Virus record (IMG/VR): IMGVR_UViG_3300042302_000394
Span: 143,814-207,813 of that record
Strand: one strand, 5' to 3'
DNA: 64,000 nt
Position 1 is the stretch's first letter. The number at the start of each line of letters is the position of its first letter. A program made the position numbers and the translations under genes. Below, in pieces: positions 4,027 to 64,000 of the stretch. The notes under the pieces are model-generated. The model was not told the DNA's origin and made no database searches. It saw only the letters and a list, made by a program, of their open reading frames with translations.

Positions 4027-4176
4027 GTTAGTATCCTTTGCAATATTTAGTTTCAAATAAAGTATAATAGATATTTTGGTAAAATACTATCTTGTTTTAA
4101 CTCAGTAGAAACACTAATATATAAATACAGAGTCAGTAGAAACCATGAGTCTACCCACACTTACAGAGGAAAAAAT

Positions 4177-37578: not shown

Positions 37579-37607
37579 ATTATACAACATTTTTGGAACA
37601 GTGTCAA
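37579..37607 (-). promoter_or_regulatory. Consensus sigma70 promoter for the ligase-infA operon
   Basis: TTGACA-17nt-TATAAT on the minus strand. Confidence 0.85.
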
Positions 37608-37625
37608 TGGACATTTTACCAAAAT

Positions 37626-38767: not shown

Positions 38768-39088
38768 TTATTTGAATAGGATCAAACTCATAATTACTGT
38801 CTGTGCCGCAAAGCCCAAACAGATAGTAGCAATGTACAAGAAGTTACGTTCAATAAGAGCTTTAAAAAACAGCGTGATCAATGCACTCCAAACAAATACC
38901 ATTAAATCTACAGGAGGCAGCTTATCGCTCTGCGCCATCAATACTGCTACAAGAGTAGGAATACTAGACAGATGCAGTAGGATAATTGTAACCCAACCTA
39001 ATGTATGGGCACTTACATGCCCAAGGTGATCTTTAGCAAATTTAACAAGAAATAATACTGCGTCTTTAATTTGATCAATGATAAACAT
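38768..39088 (-). CDS. Small three-TM membrane protein
   Basis: Three hydrophobic segments; directly downstream of the cell-wall hydrolase. Confidence 0.7.
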   Translation of the reverse strand: MFIIDQIKDAVLFLVKFAKDHLGHVSAHTLGWVTIILLHLSSIPTLVAVLMAQSDKLPPVDLMVFVWSALITLFFKALIERNFLYIATICLGFAAQTVIMSLILFK

Positions 39089-39096
39089 ACTTGTCC

Positions 39097-39678: not shown

Positions 39679-39777
39679 ATAGACCTCCTTTTTCGTTAGT
39701 GGTAAAATAATTATACAACAATGACTATTATACAGTCAAAGTTGGTAAAAAGCAACCGGTTTTGGTAAAATCTAGGA

Positions 39778-40329: not shown

Positions 40330-40438
40330 ACTTTAATTTCAATATTTTTTTCAAGACTAGGAACCCTAAATATAGCATCTATTTACTGAGAGATCAAATG
40401 TTGTTAATATAACAGTATTTTATTTAATAAATACCGCT

Positions 40439-43182: not shown

Positions 43183-43185
43183 CAG

Positions 43186-44421: not shown

Positions 44422-45763
44422 GTTTAAAAGCATCTTTCAAGTCTGGAATATAATCGCCGATTGAAATTCCTCTATGGTCATCAAGTATTTTAATTCTATG
44501 TTTGAATACCTTAAACAGTTTCGGATTGTCAGGCTTGGTTAATTCATTTAATAACAAGTGTATCTTTCCATCTAGTCCGGGAAAATCTTTAATGACTTGA
44601 CTATTTTCTAGATATGCTGTTAATCTCTGTGTAGCTAAATCTTTCAGAGACTGTGGTAACATTGATATTTGTTGTTCCATCGGAAACATAATTAAGTTGA
44701 TGTTATATGGCCACTCTTTAAAGTATGGATGCACTTTGGCCTGTTCTTCTATAAAATATAATAGGCTATCTAAGTTAACAATGTTCAATGAGCTAACGGT
44801 GATATTATTCAATATCTTAACATTGCTGTGTTTCATATAACTCTTTGCTTCAATGTAATTCTTTGATACCTGGCGCCATTTACTAGGATATCTAGCATAA
44901 TCGTTGACTTTATCAAACCCGTCAATACTGGCAATGAGTTCAAACTTTTTAAACTTAGGCATTAACTCTAAAAAGTTTTTATTTAGGTTTGTAAAGTTAC
45001 TGGACAAAAATACAGTAATATTTTTAGCATGATCATTGTCTACAACATATTGCAGTGCCTTTAACACAAATGGCATAATTGTAGGTTCACCACCGGCAAA
45101 ACTTAATACTTCTAGTCCAGGTGCTAATTTTGTAAAACTTTCCCATATTTCTTCATTATCAGACCAATCGGGATGTTCGACATCTTTCCATGTTTTATTA
45201 TGTTCAGTGATTCCAAACACACTGGAAATTTCAATAAATCTTCCATCTAATACTTTGATGCCACCAAATTTATTATTAAGTTCACCTAACTCTTTAGCAA
45301 TCTGACTACTGTCGTAACTGTTGCACATGACACATTTAAGGTTGCACAAATTACTAGGCTTTAATTCTAAATATGTTGGTTGGTGTAACACTTCGTAACT
45401 GTTGTTTATGCTGTTGGCAACTATCTCTAATGTTTTTCGATTATTTTTATAATCTTCAATTGACCGTGTACGCATACTAACGTCGCCGTCTCGAATGCAA
45501 CGCCTGCAAGCATCAGGAGTATCTCCTGTATGTAATTTTTTTCTTAAATCAACAAGGTGTTCGCTGTTCCACGCATCACTAAAATTATCCCCGGATAAAA
45601 TGCTAATGATATCTCCGTTCGGGTGTGTCATTGTTCCTACATAATTACAACACGGTTTAAGGTGGCCAGCGGGATTAGAACTTAGTTGTGTAAAAGGATA
45701 AAAACAAAATGTCTCACTTTCAATAATTTCTGTTCTTAATTGATCAATCTTGTCCATATTCAT
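44414..45763 (-). CDS. Radical SAM protein with N-terminal SPASM/twitch-like Cys cluster
   Basis: CFYPF...PCC...CRRC; NLCNLKCVMC; AGGEP. Confidence 0.9.
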   Translation of the reverse strand: MNMDKIDQLRTEIIESETFCFYPFTQLSSNPAGHLKPCCNYVGTMTHPNGDIISILSGDNFSDAWNSEHLVDLRKKLHTGDTPDACRRCIRDGDVSMRTRSIEDYKNNRKTLEIVANSINNSYEVLHQPTYLELKPSNLCNLKCVMCNSYDSSQIAKELGELNNKFGGIKVLDGRFIEISSVFGITEHNKTWKDVEHPDWSDNEEIWESFTKLAPGLEVLSFAGGEPTIMPFVLKALQYVVDNDHAKNITVFLSSNFTNLNKNFLELMPKFKKFELIASIDGFDKVNDYARYPSKWRQVSKNYIEAKSYMKHSNVKILNNITVSSLNIVNLDSLLYFIEEQAKVHPYFKEWPYNINLIMFPMEQQISMLPQSLKDLATQRLTAYLENSQVIKDFPGLDGKIHLLLNELTKPDNPKLFKVFKHRIKILDDHRGISIGDYIPDLKDAFKHD

Positions 45764-48689
45764 TATTCCTTGTTGCTTCTAACACTAATTTCATTTCTGG
45801 TATGATTTCATAAGTATTCTCACCTCTTAACTTATCCAATTGTTCCGTCACTGTTACAAATTTCTTTGCTGATGTTAAATCAAATGGTTTTTTTAATTCA
45901 TGTATGATATGTGTTAAAAGATGATCTATGCTTGTATTATATGTTTCGTTGTGCTCTTTGACAAAAGTTTCTAATTTAATTACAGTCTCTGCACGATAAT
46001 CATCGGGTAGAATACTAACATGATAATGTGAAGGATGTTCTAACAAATTGATGAAGAAATTATTGTAATTAATAAATTTGGTTTTAGGATGTTGACGTAT
46101 AACTCCTATTGAAATCAAATGTTTAATAATTTCAGGAAATCTGCCAACATTCCAAGCACCTACAGTAATACCCGGGCGTATGATAGCATTATCTAATGTC
46201 ATCAATTCTTTTAGATTTGACTCAACCTTAGACCATACAGTGCCGGCTCGAATGAGTTCTGCACGTTCTCCAACTTCATCGATACTGGGCCATATTTCTA
46301 ATTTGCCAAAGTTCCATCGCCGCCAGTAGTCAATAACATTTTTCTTATTATAAGATAACACTGATGCATTTGTGTTATATGATAGTTTAACATCAAATCG
46401 TTGTTTTTCTACCAACATTTCTAAAATTTGCCAGTGTTCAGGCATGAGTAGAGGTTCGCCTCCAGCAAAGTAAATTCTTTCCACATGGTTAATTTGATCT
46501 TTTAGAAAATCAAAGTTATTCTTATCATCTACTGATTCGATGCTCCATATTTTTTCTTGATCAGTGAGGCCTAATTTTTTAGCATCCGGCACCCATGCTG
46601 AACTGTAACGTGGTCCGCAACTACGACATTTAAAATTGCAAAGATTACTAAAACGGAAATCCCAATACTTCAACTCCATAGTAGTGCATGTTCCGTCTGC
46701 TAGTGTAATTTCTGGAATTTTTTTTACTACCTCTGGAAAGTCTCTATTGTGATAGAAACGACCACTTTCACCAGTGACCCGTTCTCTATCAAAACATTTA
46801 CGGCATATTTCGGGCTCTTTGCCCCCTATCATATCTTTTCTTAAAGATTTCATATTGCCGCTGTTCCAAATTTCTTCAATGCTCTGATGTGTTAGATCAC
46901 CAGCAAAATAATTATGTACAGAGGTTAGGCAACACGGAATTACTTTTCCACTAGGTTCAAATGCAAGATGCATCCAGGGCACTGCACATATTGTGGTTGT
47001 ATTTGTTGCAACTGCAACTACATCTTCTTTTTTGACAATTTTAATAGGTTTGTAATCGAAGGCAGTTATTTTTTTTGAGTTGAACATTGTGAGTAACCAG
47101 GACCTGTTATTTATTTGTTGTAATGTTGGTGTATTTTTATTTGCATCAAAGAACTCTTTAGCAGAATGTACAGCAGATAATGCATAATTACCGAACGGCC
47201 TATCTACTCCCAGAGTCTCCCATGCTGCCAATCTATCAATAGCTTCAGCATTATCGGGATCTTGTGCAATGGTATTGCATAACTTAATTGTTTCCCTAAA
47301 TGCACTTCGCCATGTGGCAAACTCGTCTGTGTTAAATGTTGTAATGTTACTGACTTTATCGAAGACTTTTAATTTAGGAACAATAGTCGTCAGTAGGTCT
47401 AATGTTTTCCAAACTTTGATTTTGCCAAATGCCCGCTTAGGGAATAATTTAACGCCACCGTAACCATATTCTAAATCATTAACAGGATTCTTACTGTGCC
47501 AGACGTATGTACAGTCTCTATCAAATATCTCTGGTTGGTAGTCGAACTGCCAGTCATCGACTAAGTAAGCATCACCGTCGACTACATAGAACATGTCAGT
47601 CTTGGATAACTTAGCCGCTGCCTTATGTGCCTCAAAGATACCAGTAACACCATCCACACGTTTGGCATGTGGTGCTTTTTCTAAAACACGCTGCCAATTC
47701 TCTTCTGCATTAGATTCATGGTAACTAATAAAGATTACATCCAGTGTTTCGGCAATCAGAGGAGTAACTGTTCCTATTTCTTTAACACCCACAATCTCTG
47801 CACTGGGAGTAATTTTCAAAGCCCAAATCTTCTCCCCGTTTATTTCTTTGTCTAGATACCATATATGTTCATAGGCTAGATCGTGCCAAGGAATGTCGTA
47901 ATCTAAATCAAAACGCATTTCTGGTAGGCTAGGATTTTGTTCAATTTTAAACTCAGGACTAACTGTGCCTAACCATTCCCATTTAGAAGTTTTTTTACGT
48001 TTAGGTTCAAACTTAATCAACCAAGTACCTGGTTTTGGACTGTAGTTAGGATCCAGCTCAAGTGCAGTAACGTAATCCAGAAACCAAAATGGCGGATAAC
48101 ATTCGTTGACATCGATGAGTAGTTTAGGAAGATCAGGATTCCATGTAACTCGCATTTCAGGCATAACGTATCCCATGTCTTTCTCGCCTTTAACGTTGGC
48201 GCCAGGCACCTCACAAGTAAATGCCCATATTTTATCTTCTAAAGGATTGACTCTAGGATCAATGTACCAAACTAACGTATAGTCAGCATCGTCTTGATTA
48301 TATACATAACTTTCTATAGGATTAAATTCAAATGTAATAGAACTTGCTATTGCAGAATTCTTTTTCCAGATAGGCGTTTTTGCCCACATGTGATTCTTTG
48401 GTACTTCTATTTCATGTGTTTCATATCCAGCATATGGGTGCCACCCATCTTTAAACAGTTTGGCTACCCACTCACCTTTGTATGTCCAAACTAGACATTT
48501 TCTTGTTTTAGGCACATCATTTACAAAGTTCAAGACACTAGAATGTCTTGCATAAGGATTTATCACTAAGAATTCAGTATCGCCTTCACCTAAGTTGTAT
48601 AATTGTTGGTCATAATAAAACTCATCCCCTCCCCAGGGGATTTCTTTGATTAGGTCTGTATTGATTTTGGGGTATTGATCTAGAAGCAT
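45744..48689 (-). CDS. Fusion of aromatic-rich repeats, a glycosyltransferase-like (DxD) domain and a twitch radical SAM domain
   Basis: DVIFISY.E..AEENW...AHKAAA...YVVDGD...YGYGGVKL; then CAVPW...PCC...CRKC, NLCNFKCRSC, AGGEP. Confidence 0.85.
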   Translation of the reverse strand: MLLDQYPKINTDLIKEIPWGGDEFYYDQQLYNLGEGDTEFLVINPYARHSSVLNFVNDVPKTRKCLVWTYKGEWVAKLFKDGWHPYAGYETHEIEVPKNHMWAKTPIWKKNSAIASSITFEFNPIESYVYNQDDADYTLVWYIDPRVNPLEDKIWAFTCEVPGANVKGEKDMGYVMPEMRVTWNPDLPKLLIDVNECYPPFWFLDYVTALELDPNYSPKPGTWLIKFEPKRKKTSKWEWLGTVSPEFKIEQNPSLPEMRFDLDYDIPWHDLAYEHIWYLDKEINGEKIWALKITPSAEIVGVKEIGTVTPLIAETLDVIFISYHESNAEENWQRVLEKAPHAKRVDGVTGIFEAHKAAAKLSKTDMFYVVDGDAYLVDDWQFDYQPEIFDRDCTYVWHSKNPVNDLEYGYGGVKLFPKRAFGKIKVWKTLDLLTTIVPKLKVFDKVSNITTFNTDEFATWRSAFRETIKLCNTIAQDPDNAEAIDRLAAWETLGVDRPFGNYALSAVHSAKEFFDANKNTPTLQQINNRSWLLTMFNSKKITAFDYKPIKIVKKEDVVAVATNTTTICAVPWMHLAFEPSGKVIPCCLTSVHNYFAGDLTHQSIEEIWNSGNMKSLRKDMIGGKEPEICRKCFDRERVTGESGRFYHNRDFPEVVKKIPEITLADGTCTTMELKYWDFRFSNLCNFKCRSCGPRYSSAWVPDAKKLGLTDQEKIWSIESVDDKNNFDFLKDQINHVERIYFAGGEPLLMPEHWQILEMLVEKQRFDVKLSYNTNASVLSYNKKNVIDYWRRWNFGKLEIWPSIDEVGERAELIRAGTVWSKVESNLKELMTLDNAIIRPGITVGAWNVGRFPEIIKHLISIGVIRQHPKTKFINYNNFFINLLEHPSHYHVSILPDDYRAETVIKLETFVKEHNETYNTSIDHLLTHIIHELKKPFDLTSAKKFVTVTEQLDKLRGENTYEIIPEMKLVLEATRNNEYGQD

Positions 48690-54524: not shown

Positions 54525-54651
54525 GTGCTTCCTTTGTTGTTTAAGTATGTATTATAGCATCTTTTGGAGTGCCTGTCTTGTTGTATTTTGAACACAGATC
54601 ATTTGGAGGGTCTTTGGTTGACTGATTGGTAAAACCTTGCTATAATACACT

Positions 54652-54990
54652 ATGACGACACAAACAGTAACCCGTAAGAAGCGTGTAGACCGCAATCATA
54701 TCATCTATGAGCTTGTGGTCAACGGCAAGAACTACATTGGCGTCACAGCTAAGACAGAGAGCACTGTGAACAAGAGTGTTTTGAGTCGTGCCGCTAAACA
54801 CTTCTATCGTGCCAAGACTGAGACTAAGAACTGGCTGCTCTGTGCTGAGTTGCGCACACTGAGCGACAAGAGCGAGATTGAAGTATACGTGCATGAAGTT
54901 ATACGAGGCAAGGCAGAAGCCCACAAGCGTGAAGTAGAGATCCGCAGAATGGTTAAGCCTGTTTTAAATACAGACGTTCGTGGGGACTAA
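54652..54990 (+). CDS. GIY-YIG nuclease-superfamily protein
   Basis: HIIY...NYIGVT...R...H...E...KPVLN; ATG only 5 nt after TATAAT. Confidence 0.7.
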   Translation: MTTQTVTRKKRVDRNHIIYELVVNGKNYIGVTAKTESTVNKSVLSRAAKHFYRAKTETKNWLLCAELRTLSDKSEIEVYVHEVIRGKAEAHKREVEIRRMVKPVLNTDVRGD

Positions 54991-55061
54991 GTGTCACTTC
55001 AAGTAACACTTGACAAGTTGGTAAAACCGTGTTATAATTGACACTTACACACTAAGGAGCA

Positions 55062-55340
55062 ATGATGAGTTATACACTATACATCTACAAAGCAGATCGT
55101 CGTACAAAGACCGGAGAGCGCTTGTTCTCTACTACAGTTTGGCCCGTAGCGGATGACAATGCCATGCGCCGCACTGTAGCGGACTTGTTCCATTTGTACA
55201 GGCCAGAAGACGGCTTCCGCTTCGACTGGACTCCCAGCATGAAGACTGTTAAGAACTTGATGACTGGGGCAATGGTTGAGATCGCACACGACACTCCCCG
55301 CAGTTGCGATCCGTCAAGCGAACTCTACTGGAGCATGTGA
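55062..55340 (+). CDS. Hypothetical early protein
   Basis: AAGGAG RBS; C-terminal TP.SCDPSSELYWSM. Confidence 0.8.
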   Translation: MMSYTLYIYKADRRTKTGERLFSTTVWPVADDNAMRRTVADLFHLYRPEDGFRFDWTPSMKTVKNLMTGAMVEIAHDTPRSCDPSSELYWSM

Positions 55341-55501
55341 TGAAGAACGAAATTGAACGTTTGAACTTTGTGATCTGGGCCAAGGATCGATTCCCGGGCT
55401 TTACCACCAATCACGAACAATGGACCAAGGCCAATCGGGCATGGCGGGCTGTGGCTCGCAAAAACCCAATGGTTGACAAGGTTATCGGTTTTACCGTATA
55501 A
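55340..55501 (+). CDS. Small hypothetical early protein
   Basis: TGATG coupling, GGAG RBS; its last codons run through the next promoter. Confidence 0.55.
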   Translation: MKNEIERLNFVIWAKDRFPGFTTNHEQWTKANRAWRAVARKNPMVDKVIGFTV

Positions 55502-55528
55502 TATACACTTACACACAAAGGAGCTGAT

Positions 55529-55801
55529 ATGTCCGTTCAATCTATCAACAATGAGATTCTTGCAGGCAACTTCACTAACGATCAACTGACCAGCATCATC
55601 GACGCTGTGAAATTTGCCCGAGCACGCCTTGCAGAGAAGACCAAACGCTCTGTCACGCTGGGCAGTGCTGTGAAGTTCACTAGCACTAAAACAGGCATCA
55701 CTATGCAGGGTGTCGTAGACAAGATCGCGATCAAATACGTAACAGTTCGTACTAACCAGGGCCTGTGGAGGGTGCCTGCAAATATGTTAGAAACCGCTTG
55801 A
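55529..55801 (+). CDS. Hypothetical early protein (SH3-like C-terminus)
   Basis: AAGGAG RBS; G..VKF...G.V.KI..K...V....WRVPA.ML. Confidence 0.8.
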   Translation: MSVQSINNEILAGNFTNDQLTSIIDAVKFARARLAEKTKRSVTLGSAVKFTSTKTGITMQGVVDKIAIKYVTVRTNQGLWRVPANMLETA

Positions 55802-55852
55802 CACTTTGGTAAAACCGTGTTATAATACATACTTGTTTAACAGGAGAAGACG

Positions 55853-56209
55853 ATGACTGTAGTGTATAAAGCAGGTGAGCAGACCTTTAAGGCCGTTGAG
55901 TTGTTGTTTGGCAAGCGCGAACTGGTCAATGCCGTTGTAGAGCAAGTACTGATCAGCCAGACAGAAGCTTTCATTGAGATGATCATGGACGGGCAAGAGG
56001 ACATGTCGCGCAATGGGATCAACGAAACCCTGCGTGGCGTTAAAGACAGCGCCACTGACTTCATTGGCGATATGATGGGCGACCTCGAAAGCATGATCAG
56101 AGAGCGTCTCAAGCAGGTCAACTACGGCGCGGCTGTGACGGGTATTAAGTACGATCTCGCTGGCGACGTTACAGATATTGAGGTCGATGTGTCTGTGGGC
56201 GTTGAATAA
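55853..56209 (+). CDS. Acidic hypothetical early protein
   Basis: AGGAG RBS, 118 aa. Confidence 0.8.
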   Translation: MTVVYKAGEQTFKAVELLFGKRELVNAVVEQVLISQTEAFIEMIMDGQEDMSRNGINETLRGVKDSATDFIGDMMGDLESMIRERLKQVNYGAAVTGIKYDLAGDVTDIEVDVSVGVE

Positions 56210-56271
56210 CCCTTCGGTTGACAGGGTTGGTAAAACCTGTTATAATACATACATCGCAACAAGGAGCTGAT

Positions 56272-56502
56272 ATGCGCAAGTACACTACGAAGCTGTTAGA
56301 GATGATGGATGAGGGTTTGATCTCAGCAGAAGCTGTGGCAGAGATGGCATTGGCCTACATGAGCGAGGACGATGTTAAAGACATGTGCCGTGCTAACGAC
56401 ATCCTGGACGAAGAGGATGAGGACACCATTGTTGAAGAAGACGAGGAGTGGACTCCCGACAATGCAGACTTCTGCGATCCCGGCTCACGTCACCACTATT
56501 GA
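56272..56502 (+). CDS. Acidic hypothetical early protein
   Basis: AAGGAG RBS before ATG 56272. Confidence 0.8.
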   Translation: MRKYTTKLLEMMDEGLISAEAVAEMALAYMSEDDVKDMCRANDILDEEDEDTIVEEDEEWTPDNADFCDPGSRHHY

Positions 56503-56511
56503 AAGGCAACT

Positions 56512-56892
56512 ATGCGATACTACGATGAACTGGCAACTTACGAGCGCGATGGCTTTACTGTGATCGTAGACAAGAGCTACGAAGACCTGAACCCACGTGA
56601 TTGCTTTGACTTTGATAGTGAAGAAGAAGTTAGCAAGATGTGTAAAGACATCGACAATGGCAACTTGGATTGGTTCATGTTGCGAGTGCGTGTAATGGTT
56701 GACAGCCTTGAGATGGGTTCGCACTACCTGGGCGGATGTCTGTACAAGGATGCTCGCGAAGTACTGACAGACGGCACCGCAGAGGACTGCATCGGCGAAG
56801 CACTGCACGAAGCCAAACGCGAAGTCTACAAGTACAAACAAAAATTCGCTGAGTTGAGCGACATGGTTGATCGTGAAGGTGTTGATGTTTAA
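56512..56892 (+). CDS. Hypothetical early protein
   Basis: 126 aa, YLGGCLY motif. Confidence 0.8.
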   Translation: MRYYDELATYERDGFTVIVDKSYEDLNPRDCFDFDSEEEVSKMCKDIDNGNLDWFMLRVRVMVDSLEMGSHYLGGCLYKDAREVLTDGTAEDCIGEALHEAKREVYKYKQKFAELSDMVDREGVDV

Positions 56893-57115
56893 TAAGAATG
56901 AAGTACTACAGTGGGTGGGTGCCGTGGCGATCATTGCCGGGCACGTACTCAACGCAATAGGTCCCAGTGTCTATCCTTACAATATTATCGCGTTCGCTGT
57001 GGGCACTGTAGCGTTCTTGGCATGGGCTATCCGTGTGGCAAATAAGCCACAGGCTGTGGTCAACGTTGTATCATTAGCCATAGGCATTGTAGGGTTATAC
57101 AAAGCATTTGGTTGA
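56885..57115 (+). CDS. Small three-TM membrane protein
   Basis: Hydrophobic 76 aa; stop is the TGA of the next TTGACA. Confidence 0.75.
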   Translation: MFNKNEVLQWVGAVAIIAGHVLNAIGPSVYPYNIIAFAVGTVAFLAWAIRVANKPQAVVNVVSLAIGIVGLYKAFG

Positions 57116-57146
57116 CAAGTTGGTAAAACCTTGCTATAATAAGGCA

Positions 57147-57348
57147 TAGTAAGAAATAAACAGGGTTACCTAGTCCGTTAGGGCCCACAGCAAGCGAAGA
57201 GTTCCGACGGGGACAGGTTGCTGTGGGGCATGAAGGCAGTTGTAAACGAAAGTTTACACGAGTTGCTGACGGGGAACTAGGGCGTAATGTTTGGCACACC
57301 GAACGTTAGAGACGGACTAACGGGTAGTTGACAATCCCCTGTTTTCTT
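57147..57348 (+). ncRNA. Candidate structured non-coding RNA B
   Basis: Perfect TTGACA-17-TATAAT upstream, no RBS or ORF, multi-stem junction (see findings). Confidence 0.75.
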
Positions 57349-57382
57349 GCTATAATACACACTTACACACTAAGGAGCAAAG

Positions 57383-57652
57383 ATGAAAGCACTAGAGAAG
57401 TTTATCGAGCAGAAGAATCACTGGAACAGTTTCTTCAAAGGCGAGCAATACGAGATCCAGAGTGCCAAGGGTCGCCAGCGTATCGCAGACATGATCGATG
57501 CCGCATTGAGTCCGGAGAACTTGACCTGTGATGGCGAACTGAGCCGCACAGAAGTCAATCGTCGCTACAAGGAACTGATGACTGCGGCAAAGCAGTTGAA
57601 GAAGTTGGACCCGGCTGTTTCTTTTTACGAGTGGGAAGAGGAGATCATCTAA
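57383..57652 (+). CDS. Hypothetical early protein
   Basis: AAGGAG RBS; LSPENLTCDGE motif. Confidence 0.85.
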   Translation: MKALEKFIEQKNHWNSFFKGEQYEIQSAKGRQRIADMIDAALSPENLTCDGELSRTEVNRRYKELMTAAKQLKKLDPAVSFYEWEEEII

Positions 57653-57864
57653 TGAAAGCAATGGTTACAACTGTTCTCCGTCAGGAGATTGAAGTGCCCG
57701 AGGGCACGGATCGTCAAAGTGTGCTGGAGTTTCTGGCAGAGAACCAAAGCTTCACAGATGCGTTCTGTGGTGTTAGCGATATGACACAACGGTTCCGCAT
57801 TGTTGATATCAGTGTGGTGGAAGAAGAGATTACTGAACTTGGCGAGGAGAGCTACGATGCCTAA
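57652..57864 (+). CDS. Hypothetical early protein
   Basis: TAATG coupling, GAGGAG RBS. Confidence 0.7.
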   Translation: MKAMVTTVLRQEIEVPEGTDRQSVLEFLAENQSFTDAFCGVSDMTQRFRIVDISVVEEEITELGEESYDA

Positions 57865-58405
57865 TTGGTGTTCAAACGGTATTACACTGCGTCACGCAGA
57901 CCCCCAAATGATCCAGCGGGCCGCCAAGGCTCTGCAAGAGGGCAAGTTCCTGCAGGAGTTCATTCCTTGCCCTGCCGAACTGCTGGACACTGTGGCTCAG
58001 ATGGGCACCAACGATGCTGAAAAAGCTAACCGAGAGAAGTACGGATACAGTTCCTGGTATGACTTCAATGTGGCCAACTGGGGCACCAAGTGGGATGTAG
58101 AGTCTAGCAATGTAGAGATCGAGGATGCTAACACTGTCACAGCTGGCTTCGACAGTGCCTGGGCACCACCCATCCGTGCATATGAGCAGTTGATGGACTT
58201 GGGCTTTGATCTAGTGGCCTTCTACTACGAGCCTGGCATGCAGTTTGTGGGCAAGTGGGACAACGGTAGTGACGACTGCTGTGAGTACGGTGGCGCAACT
58301 GCTGACACGGTGCGTGACATGATCGGCGAGGAGTTAGACGACTACTTCTGCATCAGCGAGAGTATGGCTGACTGGGAAGAAGAGAACCAAGAGGATCAAG
58401 AATAA
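57857..58405 (+). CDS. DUF1281/YubB-like ferredoxin-fold protein
   Basis: MPNWCSN...WY.....NWGTKWD...FDSAWAPP...YYEPGM.F.G. Confidence 0.8.
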   Translation: MPNWCSNGITLRHADPQMIQRAAKALQEGKFLQEFIPCPAELLDTVAQMGTNDAEKANREKYGYSSWYDFNVANWGTKWDVESSNVEIEDANTVTAGFDSAWAPPIRAYEQLMDLGFDLVAFYYEPGMQFVGKWDNGSDDCCEYGGATADTVRDMIGEELDDYFCISESMADWEEENQEDQE

Positions 58406-58488
58406 CCCTACAGCCCCCAGGGGCTTTGGTTGCTCGTTTTACAAAACAGTGTTATAATACACACATGTTAAAACAAACAGGAACCAAA

Positions 58489-58665
58489 ATGTTAAAAATG
58501 TATACACTGCAACGCAATAACACTTATCTAATTGCAGGAAAATTTGTGCCGCTAGCAGTAGCACAAAAAAATAAAGCAAGCATGTACAAATATAAAACTA
58601 TGCTCGCACATGCAACACAAAGCATTAAGCAAGCAGGAGACACTGTAGCAGTGTTTACTTTATAA
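58489..58665 (+). CDS. Small basic hypothetical protein, AT-rich
   Basis: AGGA RBS after promoter 58430. Confidence 0.6.
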   Translation: MLKMYTLQRNNTYLIAGKFVPLAVAQKNKASMYKYKTMLAHATQSIKQAGDTVAVFTL

Positions 58666-58748
58666 CCCTACAGCACATAGGGTCTTTGGTTGCCCTGTGT
58701 ACCTTTTTGCGTTATAATACACACATGTTAAACGAAAAGGAAATTAAA

Positions 58749-59135
58749 ATGCAAACATACACTACACTGCACACAAACGGACTCGGCTACTGGAGCCGCA
58801 CAGCTAAAGCTGTAGACGTTACGAAACTAGACTTGCAGTTCATTAACGACGAGAGAGACTTCGGCGAGCTGTGTGTGTACTTTACAGCAGACAGCTGGGA
58901 CGTTAACACAATGGGACTAATTTACACAGACAAGCAGTTTAAAGCAGAACTGCGTGAGTACTTGGTTACGTTGGGCTTTACGCAAGCAGAAGCAAACGAC
59001 GTGGAGTACAGCGAGCAGGGTATGCAGGGCGACAATTACGTGTCGTGCGATGTAGGAGATAAGTTTATTGCGGGCTTAATGCGTTTGGACCCCCAGCATG
59101 TTAACGCTGTGATTGCGGAGTGCGAGGGCATTTAA
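58749..59135 (+). CDS. Hypothetical early protein
   Basis: AAGGA RBS; G.GYWS...GLIYTD...YSEQGMQG..YVS.D. Confidence 0.8.
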   Translation: MQTYTTLHTNGLGYWSRTAKAVDVTKLDLQFINDERDFGELCVYFTADSWDVNTMGLIYTDKQFKAELREYLVTLGFTQAEANDVEYSEQGMQGDNYVSCDVGDKFIAGLMRLDPQHVNAVIAECEGI

Positions 59136-59217
59136 TAGTACAGTAAAGTGGAAGGGCATTGTTGACAGCAGTGCCCTTTTGCGTTATAATACACACATAC
59201 ACTAAACAGGAGCAGAC

Positions 59218-59373
59218 ATGAAGCGTACAGATGTTGAAGAGCTGTTGGGAAAGATGGAACAGTTTGCGGACTTCCTGTTTGCACAGGGCAAGAACTGTGC
59301 AGGCAATGAGCTGTTGGGCTTTATTGAGACCGCAGATGCTGTGTTAGAGGACTGCGAGTTGGAGGCGGAATGA
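59218..59373 (+). CDS. Small acidic protein, 51 aa (absent from the ORF track)
   Basis: AGGAG RBS; MKRTDVEELLGKMEQFADFLFAQGKNCAGNELLGFIETADAVLEDCELEAE; ATGA overlap with the next gene. Confidence 0.75.
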   Translation: MKRTDVEELLGKMEQFADFLFAQGKNCAGNELLGFIETADAVLEDCELEAE

Positions 59374-59594
59374 TTACAGCGGACAAACTCAAACTCCTCA
59401 CCAACATGCCAGCAGTTATGCTAGAGCAGGCACTGCCCGTCAAAGGCCGACCCAAACTCAAGACAGCCCGCTTCCTGGGCATCACCAACGGGCACGAGTT
59501 CTGCTACCTTGTGACAGACACTGATGACGGTGCGGGCAAACTGTTCCTCAAGTATGACCCTACAGCGGATAAGGTTTCTGCTACGCTGGCTTGA
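59370..59594 (+). CDS. Hypothetical early protein
   Basis: GGAGG RBS; stop lies inside the next TTGACA. Confidence 0.75.
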   Translation: MITADKLKLLTNMPAVMLEQALPVKGRPKLKTARFLGITNGHEFCYLVTDTDDGAGKLFLKYDPTADKVSATLA

Positions 59595-59644
59595 CAAGTT
59601 GGCAAAATCTTGTTATAATACATACATCGCAACAAGGAGTAGAC

Positions 59645-59908
59645 ATGCTTACAGTCAATCAAACTACCCGCTCTTACACTGGCAAGCCCGGCTGCATGTG
59701 CGGATGCAATGGCACTTACAACGAGGGCGAACGTGCTCGTAAGATGGCTATAACTGCTCTGCTTAAAAACCCTGCTGTGCGCTACGACAGCTGGAACGAT
59801 GGGCAAGAGGGCGCTGTGTTTGTTGTTACAGCTACCCGCAATCGTGTACTTTATCTTACAGCAGAGGGCGTGAAAGCTGTTGAAGCTATGGGCGTAAAGC
59901 CCGAGTAA
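59645..59908 (+). CDS. Hypothetical early protein with GCMCGC motif
   Basis: AAGGAG RBS; YTGKPGCMCGCNGTY. Confidence 0.8.
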   Translation: MLTVNQTTRSYTGKPGCMCGCNGTYNEGERARKMAITALLKNPAVRYDSWNDGQEGAVFVVTATRNRVLYLTAEGVKAVEAMGVKPE

Positions 59909-59980
59909 GCTGTAGGGTCTTTGGTTGACAGGGTAGCCAAACAGTGTTATAATACACACATACACAACAAAGGAGCTGAT

Positions 59981-60223
59981 ATGAATATGTCTTACTGCAT
60001 GTTTGAGAACACAATGAATGATCTGCGTCACTGCGTGGAAGCAATGGACAATGCGGACTCTATGAGCGAGCTGGACTTGAGCCGCACTGAGAAAGCAGCT
60101 TATGAGTATATGCGCGAGCTGTGCCAAAACTTCCTGGACTGTGCAGAGCGCCTGGAGCAAGAGGAAGCTGACGGACAGCCCGACGAAGCGCAAGAGTGGG
60201 CAGACTTTGATCCCGATTGCTGA
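59981..60223 (+). CDS. Acidic hypothetical early protein
   Basis: AAGGAG RBS; NMSYCMFENT..DL..C motif. Confidence 0.8.
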   Translation: MNMSYCMFENTMNDLRHCVEAMDNADSMSELDLSRTEKAAYEYMRELCQNFLDCAERLEQEEADGQPDEAQEWADFDPDC

Positions 60224-60336
60224 AATGTCAACCCCTGCCATTAGACCCTGCAACACGCCTGGGTACTTCGCAGGGGTTGACAGTTTGGTAAAACCTTGCT
60301 ATAATTAACACTTACACAAACACACTGGAGCACACA

Positions 60337-60750
60337 ATGGGTACACGAAGCACTATCGCACTTGAGTTTGCAGATGGCACAGTACAGCAAGTCTACTGTC
60401 ACTGGGACGGCTACCTGGCACACAACGGCCAGCTCTTGCTCAAGCACTACAGCGATCCGTTCAAACTGCGTGACTTGATTGACTTGGGCGGTTTCTCAAG
60501 CCTGTGCGACTCTGTTGAGGAAACTAAACAGGGTGCCTACACACAACGCGGTGAAGAGTTGTCGATTGAGAAATACAAAGACATTGAGGACTATTACAAA
60601 AATGTCAGCGGCGAGGAGTACGACTACATCCTCAGCATGAACTGGAAAGGCAAGGCTCAGTGGTATGTTCGTCACTACGGCACACAAGAGAATTGGATTC
60701 CGTTAGAACTGGCATTTGAACAAGAGAAGCAAGAGGAGGAAATGGAATGA
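60337..60750 (+). CDS. Hypothetical early protein (YCHWDGY family)
   Basis: MGTRS.I...VYCHWDGY...G..L..HY...EEYDY. Confidence 0.85.
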   Translation: MGTRSTIALEFADGTVQQVYCHWDGYLAHNGQLLLKHYSDPFKLRDLIDLGGFSSLCDSVEETKQGAYTQRGEELSIEKYKDIEDYYKNVSGEEYDYILSMNWKGKAQWYVRHYGTQENWIPLELAFEQEKQEEEME

Positions 60751-60926
60751 GCAAGATCGCTGAACTGGCATACGACATTGAGCAACTGTACATCGATGGC
60801 ATGAGTGCCAGAATGATTGCACTGACATTGGATTGCCCCGTGGAGATGGTCTACGGTTGGATTGAAGGCAACAGTGTTGCTGATACGCCACAAGAGGAGG
60901 AAGTCTATTCGCCATATTTTGGTTGA
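60747..60926 (+). CDS. Small helix-turn-helix protein, 59 aa (absent from the ORF track)
   Basis: GAGGAGG RBS, ATGA overlap; LYIDGMSARMIALTLDCPVEMVYGWI fits an HTH pattern. Confidence 0.7.
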   Translation: MSKIAELAYDIEQLYIDGMSARMIALTLDCPVEMVYGWIEGNSVADTPQEEEVYSPYFG

Positions 60927-61008
60927 CAGTTCCTCCAAAAGAGGTTATAATTAATACATGGACAGCGCGGTGCTGTTCGTACACACAGACAAACACAAAG
61001 GAAATTTT

Positions 61009-61428
61009 ATGTCTAAATCTTTTACCCATGCTGGCGTTTCTAAACAAGATGGCCAATTCAAAGTTCGTTTTGCCAATGACGCACTGCGTACCAAGGTGCT
61101 GATCAAGAACGGTCATACCGATATTGATATCATCGAGCTGAAACACGCTATGACCAAAGAGGACGCTGTTGCTTATCTCATGGAGATCGACTTTGCCACT
61201 ACCAACGGCAAGACCAATGCTGATGTGTTGGCTGCACTGGCTGCTGAGATCGACAAGCGTAGCGAAGTGCCTGCTAAAGAGGCTAAGGTTGCCAAAGCTG
61301 CAAAGGCCAAGCCTACTATGAAGGCTATCGAAGCCAAGGTGGCTGCTAAGAAGGCAGAAGCCAAACCCACTCCTACTAAAGCCCAAGTGATTGCCCAGCT
61401 GGCTGACATGGAAGACGCCCCTTACTAA
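61009..61428 (+). CDS. Hypothetical protein with Lys/Ala-rich tail
   Basis: AAGGA RBS; KVRFAND...KVL.KNGHTDI; AKEAKVAKAAKAKP tail. Confidence 0.8.
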   Translation: MSKSFTHAGVSKQDGQFKVRFANDALRTKVLIKNGHTDIDIIELKHAMTKEDAVAYLMEIDFATTNGKTNADVLAALAAEIDKRSEVPAKEAKVAKAAKAKPTMKAIEAKVAAKKAEAKPTPTKAQVIAQLADMEDAPY

Positions 61429-61512
61429 GAATAACCCCTGCAGTGTGCGTAGAGGCAATGTCAATAAGTCCTCTTCGATAACATGTATAACGGGGTATTC
61501 AGAGAGAACACT

Positions 61513-61731
61513 ATGAGTAGATTAGATTATATTGGTCGTCCTTGGACGGCATTCGATCCGGAGAACAAGCAACACCGCAAATGGTTTGCAGAGTTCCAAA
61601 GGTCCGGTACTTGGGGTCGTTGCCCTGTTCGATTCATTGTTTCGGATCAGCACGGGGATTTGATTACCCTTATCCAGCGTAAACTGATCGGACATTATGT
61701 CGATCGTGAATTTGGCAAAATTAGTGCTTGA
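61513..61731 (+). CDS. Hypothetical early protein
   Basis: RP...FDP.NK.HR.W...F.....WG.CPVRF. Confidence 0.75.
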   Translation: MSRLDYIGRPWTAFDPENKQHRKWFAEFQRSGTWGRCPVRFIVSDQHGDLITLIQRKLIGHYVDREFGKISA

Positions 61732-61796
61732 TTTACCAGTCAGTCTTCTCTATAATAGATAATAACTGCACAGCAGTATCTAACAAGGAAGACAAA

Positions 61797-62066
61797 ATGA
61801 AAACGATTAATCCAGAAACCAAAGCCGGGAAACTATTCACAGCATTGAAAGCAGGCGAGGCATTGACTCCTGCACAGGCTGCAAAGCGTTTCGGTATCAA
61901 GAATGTCACAGCTGAAGTCAGCCGTATTCGTCAAAGCGGTTTCGCAGTGTATGCAAACAACCGCAAAGCCGGTAACGGTGTTGAAGTGACCGAGTATGTT
62001 ATGGGTCAACCAAGCCGCAAGATCATTGCCGCAGGTTACAAGGCTATGGCTCTCGGCCTTGCGTAA
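61797..62066 (+). CDS. Winged helix-turn-helix DNA-binding protein
   Basis: L..GE.LT..QA..RFGI.N..A.VS.IR..GF.VY.N; AAGGA RBS. Confidence 0.75.
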   Translation: MKTINPETKAGKLFTALKAGEALTPAQAAKRFGIKNVTAEVSRIRQSGFAVYANNRKAGNGVEVTEYVMGQPSRKIIAAGYKAMALGLA

Positions 62067-62116
62067 GTAGAGAGTTCGCTCCGAAGTCCTGGGGGTAGTG
62101 TCCCAGGCAAACCCCC

Positions 62117-62158
62117 GAGCCCTGCCACGCTGTGAAGCTGTTGCGGGGCTCACCTTTT
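62117..62158 (+). terminator. Probable terminator hairpin
   Basis: GAGCCCTGC...GCGGGGCTC followed by ACCTTTT. Confidence 0.5.
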
Positions 62159-62220
62159 GTGGCAAAAATACAACACCAAAAGAGGTTGACAGAGTGGTAA
62201 AACCTTGCTATAATACATAC

Positions 62221-62493
62221 ATGAACTTAAACAATGTCGACGAAGAATGGTTCCGCAGAGATCGAAGCTTTCGTATCATAGGCAATGATCAAGTAGGCTA
62301 TCATGTCCGAGCCTGTGGAAACCATCGTGTTCTCAGCGATAGAGAAGAGCCCTTAAAGACCCTACAAGACGCAAGGAATTGGTTGACAGAATACTATCCC
62401 GGTGTTATAATACATACATCGCAACAAGGAGCAGTCAATGAGCTACATTGTTTTCAAACACAACAAGGAATACGGTCCACGCAAAGGACTTGA
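62221..62493 (+). CDS. Possible leaderless ORF that reads through the next promoter cassette
   Basis: ATG 6 nt after TATAAT; the C-terminal third overlaps promoter 62383 and the next gene. Confidence 0.35.
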   Translation: MNLNNVDEEWFRRDRSFRIIGNDQVGYHVRACGNHRVLSDREEPLKTLQDARNWLTEYYPGVIIHTSQQGAVNELHCFQTQQGIRSTQRT

Positions 62494-62641
62494 AGGACCC
62501 TTCCACTATCCCAATGGCCGTGTTGCCTACTACGATCCTAAGGAAGGCCGCTACTGGGATCCACGGACTGACTTCTACCTCGAGACTGAGGAAGCCGCTG
62601 AACTCCAGAACTCGATCTTCGGAGTGCTGAAACGTGCTTAA
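62438..62641 (+). CDS. Hypothetical early protein
   Basis: AAGGAG RBS; GLEGPF...G.V.YYDPKEG.Y.D...D.Y. Confidence 0.8.
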   Translation: MSYIVFKHNKEYGPRKGLEGPFHYPNGRVAYYDPKEGRYWDPRTDFYLETEEAAELQNSIFGVLKRA

Positions 62642-62819
62642 GATACATCCAGACCTTAACCCACTAGAGGTCATCCTAGTCGAAGAGGACATGGCCCGCA
62701 AGGGAATCACACACTACACAATGACTCCGGGCAATGACTGCATCTGGGTCTACTACGGTTCTATGAACCTTTACTACATCTTCAACGAGGGTAAGATACA
62801 TGACATCCAAATCGATTAA
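62634..62819 (+). CDS. Hypothetical early protein
   Basis: GTG start with GGAG RBS, overlaps both neighbours. Confidence 0.6.
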   Translation: MLKIHPDLNPLEVILVEEDMARKGITHYTMTPGNDCIWVYYGSMNLYYIFNEGKIHDIQID

Positions 62820-63009
62820 AGTCTATCAGGAAACCACACAGTGGACAGACAGCAACGCCGGTAACCATGTCTACATCTTCAACGAGCGGGTTACAGGTCG
62901 AAGTGCCACAGCTATTGCCTACATACCTGCGGGCACAGATCAGGTAAAGAAGTTCCGTACACCGCTCAAGCTGGATCTCAAAGGGCGAACATTTAAAGAG
63001 TTGACTTGA
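62800..63009 (+). CDS. Hypothetical early protein
   Basis: 69 aa; ETT.W...NH.Y...R.F pattern. Confidence 0.7.
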   Translation: MTSKSIKVYQETTQWTDSNAGNHVYIFNERVTGRSATAIAYIPAGTDQVKKFRTPLKLDLKGRTFKELT

Positions 63010-63035
63010 TAAATAATTGACTGTATAATAGAACT

Positions 63036-63323
63036 ATGAAACGAATCCTTACTTCAATCGCACTGATCGCATCCTTGGGCACTGCACAGGCAGCTGGTCC
63101 AGAGGATGTCTTGCTGGGTATCATCCTAGGCGGATTCATAGGCAATTCAATGGCTAAACAACAGCCCGTTCAGCCTCCTGTAATCGTTCAACAACCTCCT
63201 GTGATCTACCAACCACAACCGCAGATCATCTACCAACCCTTGCCCCCACAGCCGGTATGCTACCATACTCCGGTCTATAACGGCTATGGTCAGTTCTTTG
63301 GCTGGCGCACTCACTGTAGATAA
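63036..63323 (+). CDS. Exported or membrane Pro/Gln-rich protein
   Basis: Signal peptide, glycine-zipper-like LLGIILGGFIG, QPPVIYQP repeats; ATG 6 nt after TATAAT. Confidence 0.75.
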   Translation: MKRILTSIALIASLGTAQAAGPEDVLLGIILGGFIGNSMAKQQPVQPPVIVQQPPVIYQPQPQIIYQPLPPQPVCYHTPVYNGYGQFFGWRTHCR

Positions 63324-63329
63324 AGATTC

Positions 63330-63404
63330 CTGGCCATAGTTCAATGGACAGAACATCTGCCTTCTAAGCAGTCAATCCAGGTTCGATTCCTGGTGGCCGG
63401 ACCA
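63330..63404 (+). tRNA. tRNA-Arg (anticodon TCT)
   Basis: Acceptor CTGGCCA/TGGCCGG, D arm GTTC/GAAC, anticodon loop CTTCTAA, T loop TTCGATT, encoded CCA. Confidence 0.95.
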
Positions 63405-63472
63405 AATAACCCTGCACTTGACAGGGTTTCTTTTTGATGTTATAATACATACATCGCAACAAGGAGCACACA

Positions 63473-63790
63473 ATGGCTAAACTGTTAATCACTACACAAT
63501 ACTACGAGAACTACGGTGCCCATGATTGGGACGGCAAGAACGAGTGCCCACAGTACTGGAAAGCCAAGGGCGGTTCGGACTACGTGGTCAAGAAGTTCAA
63601 AGGTGGCTCTGCCGATGCTACCATGGCGGTCATGTGCCTGCGAGCACAGATTGAGTCAGACAACGATCACTTCCGTGAAACAGTGATCGACTTCCGCATT
63701 GTCAAGGACGACTACCTCACAGAGTTTGAGCAGAGCCAGTTGGACTACGAAGGTTCCATCCGTTACCCAGCAAAAGAGTTGGTTTGGTAA
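63473..63790 (+). CDS. Hypothetical early protein
   Basis: AAGGAG RBS; TQY.ENYGAHDWDG..ECPQYWK.KGG. Confidence 0.85.
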   Translation: MAKLLITTQYYENYGAHDWDGKNECPQYWKAKGGSDYVVKKFKGGSADATMAVMCLRAQIESDNDHFRETVIDFRIVKDDYLTEFEQSQLDYEGSIRYPAKELVW

Positions 63791-63857
63791 AGACCTTAGT
63801 GGTTGACAGGGCTTTGAATTCCTGTTACAATACACACATAGACACTAAGGAGCAAAG

Positions 63858-64000
63858 ATGATTAGAGAACACATCGAGATGGACACACGACACGGTGGTC
63901 CTTATGATCGCGGCATGGCAGACAGCTATTACCGCAGGGACTACAATCCCCACTACTACCTAGGTGACACCAAAGCCTCAGGGCGTGTCACTCTCAAGGA
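63858..64000 (+). CDS. Hypothetical early protein, truncated by the window edge
   Basis: AAGGAG RBS; RHGGPYDRG.ADSYY.R...PHYY. Confidence 0.75.
   Translation, partial: MIREHIEMDTRHGGPYDRGMADSYYRRDYNPHYYLGDTKASGRVTLK

What the first reader, a model, noticed from the sequence alone, without database searches (positions are those of the whole stretch)
54624..62208. Conserved operator-like GGTAAAACC motif inside promoter spacers, once in reverse orientation
Seen: TGGTAAAACC lies between -35 and -10 in the promoters at 54618, 55010, 55798, 56218, 57112, 60277 and 62186, with variant TGGCAAAATC at 59591, and appears reversed (GGTTTTACC) at 55473. TTGGTAAAA also occurs in distant intergenic regions at 4076, 37614 (reverse), 39742 and 39762. 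Spacers are normally unconstrained. Inference: binding site of a phage regulator that shuts off or times early transcription. Local candidates are the unannotated HTH (60747-60926) and the winged HTH (61797-62066).
Basis: partly seen in the sequence, partly recalled or inferred. Interest (0 to 1): 0.6.

Follow-up and report, generated by a model that had tools for sequence, protein, structure and literature searches.

The report
Conserved regulatory box in phage promoters
A short DNA word (TGGTAAAA, usually TGGTAAAACC) sits at a fixed place inside about a third of the very strong host-type promoters of one lineage of uncultured lake phages and next to two other promoters, and is kept by selection, so it is most likely the landing site of a still unidentified regulator that times phage gene expression.

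Summary
GGTAAAACC occurs 9 times in the window (0.54 expected). Eight copies lie in the spacers of perfect TTGACA-17-TATAAT promoters of a same-strand early-gene array.

It is not private to this genome and not a recent duplication. More than 118 IMG/VR contigs carry the same promoter-plus-box, against 23 scattered hits in 596 Gb of bacterial genomes. In relatives chosen by an early protein alone, about 98% of all copies lie in promoter spacers, almost always at -25 to -17. Neighbouring spacer bases vary freely.

The trait splits the phage group once. One clade has the box in 25-60% of its promoters. The sister clade has the same promoter design and no box.

The 8-base core TGGTAAAA is also conserved outside spacers: 6 bases upstream of the -35 of the DNA-ligase promoter, and in three reversed copies around the endolysin promoter. 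It works in either orientation. This favours a separate sequence-specific DNA-binding factor over an RNA-polymerase-intrinsic element.

Both occur in the box-free clade with no clade-specific residue. The protein that binds the box is unknown, and repression of early promoters is inferred.

The parts
54618..54646 (+). Early promoter with a forward box (box at 54627-54636). It drives the leaderless first early gene 54652-54990.
55010..55038 (+). Perfect promoter with a forward box (55019-55028).
55473..55502 (+). Perfect promoter with an 18-bp spacer and a reversed box (55487-55495). The reversed form is conserved in 6 distinct orthologous promoters.
55798..55826 (+). Perfect promoter with a forward box (55807-55816).
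56218..56246 (+). Perfect promoter with a forward box shifted by one base (56228-56237).
57112..57140 (+). Perfect promoter with a forward box (57121-57130). It drives a structured non-coding RNA at 57141-57327.
59591..59619 (+). Perfect promoter with a degenerate box (TGGCAAAATC, 2 mismatches).
60277..60305 (+). Perfect promoter with a forward box (60286-60295).
62186..62214 (+). Perfect promoter with a forward box (62195-62204).
37579..37621 (-). DNA-ligase promoter (37579-37607) with a TGGTAAAA box 6 bases upstream of its -35 (37614-37621). The box is conserved at -49 to -42 in 17 of 21 distinct orthologous promoters.
39700..39770 (-). Intergenic region upstream of the SleB-like cell-wall hydrolase gene 39097-39678. 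Three box cores (39700-39707, 39743-39750, 39763-39770) are reversed relative to the minus-strand promoter 39710-39739. They lie about at the start site, just upstream of the -35, and about 20 bases further upstream.
4077..4084 (+). Isolated intergenic box core next to a TATAAT-like hexamer. Conservation was not checked.
61797..62066 (+). It is also present in the box-free clade.
60747..60926 (+). It is also present in the box-free clade.

Best explanation
TGGTAAAA, which appears as T-GGTAAAACC in spacers, is the recognition site of a sequence-specific DNA-binding factor that is separate from RNA polymerase. The factor is used by one clade of uncultured lake phages and is most likely phage-encoded.

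In about a third of the host sigma-70-type early promoters the site occupies -26 to -17, between perfect -35 and extended -10 elements. A bound protein there would compete with or trap RNA polymerase, so that this subset of early genes is shut off or timed. The same site next to the ligase and endolysin promoters lets the same factor modulate later genes.

Shown: the element exists, it is under purifying selection, it is clade-specific, and it is used in several positions and in both orientations. Inferred: that a protein binds it, that the protein is phage-encoded, and that the effect at spacers is repression.
For: 1. Enrichment and exclusivity.
- 9 hits against 0.54 expected in the window.
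- In 80 relatives fetched through an early protein, 200 of 220 copies lie in perfect promoters. Of the 14 distinct remaining contexts, 12 are near-perfect promoters.

2. Selection rather than duplication.
- In orthologous promoters down to about 45-65% protein identity the box is kept while the upstream DNA diverges.
- Positions -29 to -27, -16 and -13 carry only 0.1-0.4 bits.
- The mismatch distribution is bimodal: 78 promoters with 0 mismatches and 22 with 1, against a background peak at 5-8.

3. Clade specificity.
- One change on the anchor-protein tree (SH-aLRT 94).
- 41 loci carry the box in 25-60% of their promoters. 36 sister loci have 4-15 perfect promoters each and no box.
- No 9-mer dominates in the sister clade.

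4. Independence from promoter geometry.
- A reversed copy is conserved in 6 orthologous promoters.
- The core is conserved at -49 to -42 of the ligase promoter in 17 of 21 distinct orthologues, while that promoter's spacer varies.
- Three reversed copies flank the endolysin promoter and are conserved to about 60% identity.
- The ligase orthologues of the box-free clade lack the site, and the 8-mer is not enriched in those records.

5. TGGTAAAA ranks first among all 420 permutations of its letters, both in total and in intergenic count in the genome.

6. The box is not a host promoter feature: 23 single hits in 596 Gb of bacterial genomes against more than 118 viral contigs.
Against: - No binding protein is identified.
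- The only Pfam-supported DNA-binding domain in the 208-kb record (HTH_39) is shared with the box-free clade and shows no clade-specific residue.
- No GntR, HTH_3 or sigma-70 region 2 domain was found, but the record is only about 58% complete.
- The register in the spacer is almost invariant: 80 of 88 distinct box promoters. Simple steric repression does not require this. It could instead reflect a fixed geometry with RNA polymerase, or common descent of promoter cassettes.
- The box is short and asymmetric. The centre is AAA in 80 of 80 cases, and the right-hand CC is the least conserved part. This is unlike a classical dimeric operator.
- At most genes the box or no-box state flips among orthologues, about 40-50% box, so it does not define a fixed regulon. 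The first gene is the exception, with 25 of 28.
- Only one gain or loss event is sampled, so co-occurrence arguments are weak.
Confidence: 0.5

Rival explanations
1. The box is an RNA-polymerase-intrinsic promoter element. It would be a spacer sequence or A-tract shape read by the host holoenzyme (sigma region 3, the beta-prime zipper) that raises promoter strength or escape, with no separate factor.
For: The register and orientation in the spacer are almost fixed (80 of 88). Box promoters carry the extended -10 TG more often than other promoters (1.0-1.1 bits against 0.4-0.5). All promoters of the group weakly prefer A/T at -21 to -19. Spacer sequence is known to affect sigma-70 promoters through R451 near -18 (PMC3130263).
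Against: The sister clade has the same perfect promoters and 5'UTRs with free spacers. The most conserved part is -26 to -19, not -18. Reversed copies in other registers are conserved. The same 8-mer is conserved upstream of a -35 and around a start site, where no single polymerase part could read it.
Confidence: 0.15
2. The box is read by a host transcription factor, for example a FadR-subfamily GntR regulator such as PdhR or LldR. Phage early transcription would then be gated by host physiology.
For: The core GGT-N3-ACC equals the 9-bp core of the E. coli PdhR box. Real PdhR sites include the same centre, for example the grcA and wzc sites in Table 1 of PMC7660256. No GntR or FCD domain is encoded in the phage record. 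Bacterial hits to the pattern are palindromic sites centred on the same word inside promoter spacers. The two clades could differ in host.
Against: The flanks expected for a PdhR-type palindrome are not conserved: -27 carries 0.1 bit, and the right flank is taken by TGn. The centre is invariant and conservation is asymmetric. The host is unknown. Repression of a phage's own early promoters by a host factor is costly unless it is conditional.
Confidence: 0.1
3. The box has no function of its own. It hitch-hikes in a promoter cassette that spreads by recombination or gene conversion, as in PeSL-like modular shuffling.
For: The array is built of terminator-plus-promoter cassettes with shared 5'UTRs. 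The box or no-box state flips between orthologues. Assembly unitigs break at the promoters, and variant joints connect different promoters. PeSLs with near-perfect sigma-70 promoters are known (PMC4122927).
Against: The three bases between the -35 and the box, and the bases flanking the TG, are unconstrained although they lie inside the same 29-bp unit. Conversion would homogenise them too. The core is also conserved outside any cassette, at the ligase and endolysin promoters.
Confidence: 0.07
4. The spacer acts as a hairpin or cruciform, with GGT-AAA-ACC as stem and loop. The structure rather than the sequence would be selected, at the DNA or read-through RNA level.
For: Spacers of the whole group are more self-complementary than column-shuffled controls: mean MFE -2.51 against -1.31 +/- 0.04. 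The effect persists after thinning (z -4 to -9). Perfect inverted repeats of 5 bp or more occur in 12.1% against 4.6%. There are families with compensatory arm changes. The box is sometimes the centre of a 7-bp palindrome.
Against: The box is conserved as sequence, with arms and loop invariant. Its own stem is only 3 bp, and the flanks of most box promoters do not pair. Sites outside spacers lack the CC arm.
Confidence: 0.05

Closest known systems
Bacillus phage phi29 protein p4 switch (from my own knowledge, not tested here)
   Same: One small phage protein binds sites placed differently relative to host sigma-A/sigma-70-type promoters. It represses early promoters and activates a later one. 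This is the logic proposed here for spacer sites versus sites upstream of the -35.
   Different: p4 sites are inverted repeats upstream of or overlapping the -35, not in spacers. No p4 homologue was found, and no binding was shown here.
T4 MotA box of middle promoters and lambda Q binding element in the PR' spacer (from my own knowledge)
   Same: A short phage-specific DNA word inside the core promoter region is read by a phage factor together with host RNA polymerase at a fixed register.
   Different: The MotA box replaces the -35 and needs AsiA. The Q element serves one late promoter and antitermination. Here the -35 and -10 are perfect, and dozens of early promoters carry the box.
E. coli PdhR box, the FadR-subfamily GntR operator type (PMC7660256)
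   Same: The same 9-bp core GGT-N3-ACC. Some genuine PdhR sites even share the AAA centre.
   Different: The PdhR box is a 15-17 bp palindrome with a free centre. Here the centre is invariant, the flanks are free and conservation is asymmetric. No GntR gene is present in the phage record.
PeSL composite terminator-promoter cassettes of T4-like phages (PMC2839356, PMC4122927)
   Same: Repeated near-perfect TTGACA-N17-TATAAT early promoters are preceded by a stem-loop at gene boundaries in ORFan-rich regions. They show signs of modular shuffling.
   Different: PeSLs are not described there as carrying a conserved spacer word. This phage shows no T4 gp23 match (inconclusive) and no DNA similarity to any isolate.
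Repressor operators placed in promoter spacers, such as P22 Arc at Pant and synthetic lac-operator T5 promoters (from my own knowledge)
   Same: A protein site lies between the -35 and -10 of a strong promoter and gives tight repression.
   Different: Those operators are dyad-symmetric and 17-21 bp long. This one has a 10-bp asymmetric core.

Membership tests
sigma-70-type (housekeeping) promoter | -35 TTGACA, 17 +/- 1 bp spacer, -10 TATAAT, optional TGn | tested here: met
   12 of 12 hexamer matches at 14 sites and 11 of 12 at 3 more within 9.4 kb. Most carry TG.
Protein operator or transcription-factor binding site | Conserved beyond its neighbours in orthologous regulatory regions | tested here: met
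Protein operator or transcription-factor binding site | Works at different positions and orientations relative to promoters | tested here: met
   Spacer forward and reversed, -49 to -42 at the ligase promoter, and three reversed copies at the endolysin promoter.
Protein operator or transcription-factor binding site | A cognate protein binds it | not testable with these tools
   No DNA-protein assay or DNA-protein modelling was available. The candidate HTH proteins are not clade-specific.
PdhR/FadR-type GntR box | Core GGT-N3-ACC | tested here: met
PdhR/FadR-type GntR box | Extended palindrome AATTGGT...ACCAATT with a free centre | tested here: not met
   -27 carries 0.1 bit. The right flank is TGn. 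The centre is AAA in 80 of 80.
PdhR/FadR-type GntR box | A GntR-family regulator is available | tested here: inconclusive
   None in the 208-kb phage record. The host is unknown.
sigma-54 promoter (-24 GG / -12 GC) | TGGCAC-N5-TTGC spacing | tested here: not met
   TGGTAA-N4-TTGC is one base short. TTGC, GTGC or ATGC follows the box in only 27 of 80 box promoters.
MerR-type spacer-binding activator site | Over-long 19-20 bp spacer | tested here: not met
   718 of 760 promoters have exactly 17 bp.
PeSL-like mobile promoter cassette | Stem-loop terminator joined to a near-perfect early promoter, repeated at gene boundaries | tested here: met
   This describes the cassette, not the box.

The most novel reading that the evidence does not exclude
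The box is an operator for a host metabolite-sensing GntR-type repressor (PdhR- or LldR-like) that this phage clade has copied into its early, ligase and lysis promoters. The infection programme would then be gated by the host's carbon or energy state, as a built-in hibernation switch.
Probability: 0.07. Interest if true: 0.8.

Novelty: new member of a known kind. Interest (0 to 1): 0.5.

Why it matters
It defines a testable regulatory circuit in a large, abundant and entirely uncultured group of lake phages. At least 310 IMG/VR contigs encode the anchor early protein. The circuit consists of a discrete 8-10 bp word that marks a subset of exceptionally strong host-type promoters and two later promoters. 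A natural control exists in a sister clade with the same promoter design but no box.

The box gives a handle for finding the regulator, by DNA affinity or one-hybrid screening. It also helps to dissect early shut-off in phages without cultured hosts, and supplies compact, possibly switchable, consensus promoters for synthetic biology.

Tried and rejected
- DNA similarity to 50,697 phage records, in near and distant modes, gave no match. The early protein also gave none. The ligase gave only distant hits of about 34%.
- The sigma-54 reading was rejected on spacing.
- Reading the core as an extended -10 (TGnTAAAAT) was rejected. The base after the core is C in spacers and mostly A at the ligase site.
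- The endolysin leader block as a repeated late-promoter consensus was rejected. It is unique in the genome.
- A phylogenetic profile of early genes first pointed to the 90-aa protein 55529-55801, found in 36 of 37 box loci and 0 of 33 box-free loci. A search of whole box-free records then found the family in G003 and G004 (E 1e-45 to 1e-49), and in G004 the match lies beyond the end of the fetched locus. The 'absence' was therefore a flank artefact and the candidate is withdrawn.
- The fold of that protein (pLDDT 80) is two helices plus a Tudor/KOW/SH3-like barrel (Z 8-9). This is uninformative about DNA binding. The Atlas shows only viral clusters of unknown function.
- Pfam scans of 40 proteins, the early ORFs among them, gave only the HTH_39 hit above cut-off for an early ORF.
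- Rfam gave only the tRNA.
- The bacterial hits are unrelated single sites.
- Complex prediction, the search for homologous proteins and the search of protein representatives were not used. No claim here rests on them.
Full report
**Setting.**
The window is the last 64 kb of a 207,813-bp linear IMG/VR virus record. The record has 40.8% GC and CheckV estimates it as 58% complete. The same DNA is held by many lake-water metagenomes. No isolate phage resembles it at the DNA level. From 54.6 kb to the end of the record the + strand carries an array of small ORFan genes. This array holds 17 perfect or near-perfect sigma-70-type promoters in 9.4 kb. Most have the extended -10 TG, many are preceded by a terminator-like hairpin ending in TTTGG, and they are followed by a conserved CA-rich leader with a strong ribosome-binding site.

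**Observation.**
GGTAAAACC occurs 9 times in the window against 0.54 expected.
- The variant at 59591 and the four distant TTGGTAAAA copies are also there.
- With the -35 at -35 to -30 and the -10 at -12 to -7, the box T-GGTAAAACC occupies -26 to -17.

**Not private, not host-derived.**
These hold 259 box promoters among 760 perfect promoters in 1.03 Mb, and 718 of the 760 have exactly 17 bp of spacer.
- The same scan of 596 Gb of bacterial and archaeal genomes gave 23 single, scattered hits. These are mostly different palindromic sites in Firmicutes.
- Thirty to 37 of the viral loci encode homologues of the window's early proteins.

**Unbiased sample.**
To remove ascertainment bias I fetched relatives through the first early protein (54652-54990). 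310 contigs encode it, and the best 80 were kept.
- These loci hold 778 perfect promoters in 959 kb, 96% of them on the gene strand.
- 186 carry the forward box and 14 the reversed box.
- That accounts for 200 of the 220 copies of the 9-mer. Of the 14 distinct remaining contexts, 12 are promoters with one hexamer mismatch.
- 80 of 88 distinct box promoters use the same register.
- Mismatch counts to the 10-mer are bimodal: 78, 22, 15 and 16 promoters at 0, 1, 2 and 3 mismatches, then a background peak at 5-8. Box promoters are therefore a discrete class.

**Selection.**
- Upstream of orthologous genes the box persists down to about 45-65% protein identity, while the DNA upstream of the -35 diverges.
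- Within box promoters, positions -29 to -27, -16 and -13 carry 0.1-0.4 bit although they lie inside the same 29-bp unit. The box is far better conserved than adjacent spacer bases, so recent duplication or gene conversion alone does not explain it.
- At the canonical register the centre is AAA in 80 of 80 cases.
- Variants lose mainly the right-hand CC and the first T.
- The core is therefore the asymmetric word TGGTAAAA.

**Clade structure.**
- Per-locus counts are bimodal.
- On a tree of the anchor protein the trait needs a single change, on a branch with SH-aLRT 94. One side has 41 loci with the box in 25-60% of promoters. The other has 36 loci with 4-15 perfect promoters each and none with the box.
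- The box-free clade keeps the same promoter and leader design, but no 9-mer exceeds 6 of its 146 distinct promoters, against 88 of 285 in the box clade.
- Free spacers in a sister clade argue that the host polymerase does not need the box.

**Outside the spacers.**
In the whole record TGGTAAAA ranks first among all 420 permutations of its letters. It has 27 copies in total and at least 11 intergenic copies, against means of 10.5 and 1.1. Two non-early sites are conserved in relatives.
- *Ligase promoter.* The core lies six bases upstream of the -35 of the DNA-ligase promoter (37614-37621, minus strand). It is present in 17 of 21 distinct orthologous promoters, at -49 in 14 of them, from 100% down to 69% protein identity. 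That promoter's own spacer varies.
- *Endolysin promoter.* Three copies, reversed relative to transcription, surround the promoter of a SleB-like cell-wall hydrolase gene (39097-39678; Pfam Hydrolase_2, 82 bits). They lie about at the start site, just upstream of the -35, and about 20 bases further upstream. They are conserved to about 60% identity.
- *Box-free clade.* In five box-free records the 8-mer is no more frequent than its reversed control. The seven copies I inspected lie in coding-like DNA. The two ligase orthologues I could inspect (59-63% identity) lack it.

Spacer sites and non-spacer sites therefore appear together in one clade.

**Interpretation.**
Several properties point to a separate sequence-specific DNA-binding factor:
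- the word works in both orientations;
- it works at four kinds of position relative to promoters;
- it is confined to promoter neighbourhoods;
- it is gained or lost as a set.

Inside a 17-bp spacer between consensus hexamers, such a factor should interfere with polymerase. Upstream of a -35 it could help or hinder. This is the logic of phage temporal switches such as phi29 p4 (my knowledge, not tested). I put 0.9 on 'selected functional cis-element', about 0.65 on 'read by a protein other than polymerase', and about 0.5 on the full statement that the factor is phage-encoded and provides early shut-off or timing.

**Who reads it.**
The winged HTH passes Pfam's cut-off and the 59-aa ORF does not.
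- Both are present in the box-free clade, in 30 of 33 and 16 of 33 loci.
- Alignments show conserved helices and no column that separates the clades. This makes them poor candidates for a clade-specific site.
- A profile of early genes pointed to the 90-aa protein 55529-55801, whose own promoter has the reversed box. A search of whole box-free records found that family in two of them, and in at least one the match lies beyond the fetched flank, so I withdraw it. Its Tudor/KOW-like fold says nothing decisive.
- The record has no GntR, HTH_3 or sigma-70 region 2 domain, but 42% of the genome may be missing.

**A lead from sequence.**
GGT-N3-ACC is the core of the E. coli PdhR box, and genuine PdhR sites share the AAA centre (PMC7660256). 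The palindromic flanks and free centre that define that operator type are not met here. I therefore keep a host GntR-type reader only as a low-probability rival, though an interesting one.

**Other rivals.**
- *Polymerase-intrinsic element.* This fits the rigid register and the known sensitivity of sigma-70 to spacer sequence (PMC3130263). It does not fit the box-free sister clade, the reversed copies or the non-spacer sites.
- *Neutral hitch-hiking in PeSL-like cassettes.* This fits the cassette design, the frequent box or no-box flips at a given gene and the assembly joints between promoters. It does not fit the free bases inside the unit or the sites outside cassettes.
- *Hairpin reading.* This rests on a real but modest excess of self-complementarity in the spacers of the whole group. 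The box, however, is conserved as letters and its own stem is three pairs.
- *Sigma-54 and MerR-type readings.* Both fail on spacing.

**Novelty.**
I found no description of this box in the held literature. It is a new member of a known kind: a phage promoter-embedded regulatory site. Its unusually clean natural contrast, two sister clades, makes it readily testable.

**Limits.**
- The host is unknown.
- Only one gain or loss of the box is sampled.
- Only the best 80 loci per protein search were retrieved.
- There is no expression or binding evidence.

Noticed in passing
window 57141-57327 (+): The box promoter at 57112 is followed by about 180 nt without an ORF. This stretch folds very stably (MFE -65.3 kcal/mol, z -5.6). 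Six distinct relatives show 8 base pairs with compensatory changes. There is no Rfam match. It is a candidate new phage early non-coding RNA.
   Followed up: partly
window 54652-54990 (+): The first early gene is leaderless: TATAAT, six bases, then ATG, in 56 of 71 orthologues. Its 112-aa product is very conserved (310 IMG/VR contigs) and carries GIY-YIG-like motifs, but has no Pfam hit.
   Followed up: partly
window 54600-64000 and loci L001-L225: The promoter spacers of the whole phage group are more self-complementary than column-shuffled controls. Some families have GNRA-like loops and compensatory arm changes. No explanation so far.
   Followed up: partly
window 54600-64000 (+): The early array is built of PeSL-like cassettes: a terminator hairpin ending in TTTGG, a perfect promoter, and a CA-rich leader with AAGGAG. 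There is one perfect promoter per about 1.2 kb in relatives. In a lake DNA run, assembly unitigs break at the promoters and variant joints link different promoters.
   Followed up: partly
window 56272-56502 (+) and L154, L207, L211, L214: The acidic 79-aa early protein ends in a tail (..DFCDPGSRHHY). In some relatives the same tail, or a close variant of it, is fused to the C-terminus of the 55529-55801 family. It is possibly a shared docking peptide.
   Followed up: no
window 36255-48689: A cluster of four radical-SAM genes, one of which (40439-42403) also has a B12-binding domain, lies at 40439-48689. An Fe-S assembly protein (37626-38003) and an ATP-dependent DNA ligase are next to it. This suggests a phage-encoded modification or metabolite pathway.
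   Followed up: no
window 9578-34870 (-): Very large fibre-like genes with collagen repeats, He_PIG Ig domains, six Laminin_G_3 domains and an Mtd_N domain (the major tropism determinant N-terminus).
   Followed up: no
genome C1:131123 (minus), outside the window: Another TGGTAAAA lies directly after a terminator-like hairpin and seven bases before a TTGCAA hexamer. This is the same layout as at the ligase promoter.
   Followed up: no
loci L123-L145 (bacterial genomes): The bacterial hits of the pattern are palindromes centred on the same word (CGGTAAAACCG with paired flanks) inside perfect promoters of Streptococcus, Floricoccus, Ruminococcus and others. They are probably operators of an unidentified regulator and unrelated to the phage.
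   Followed up: no
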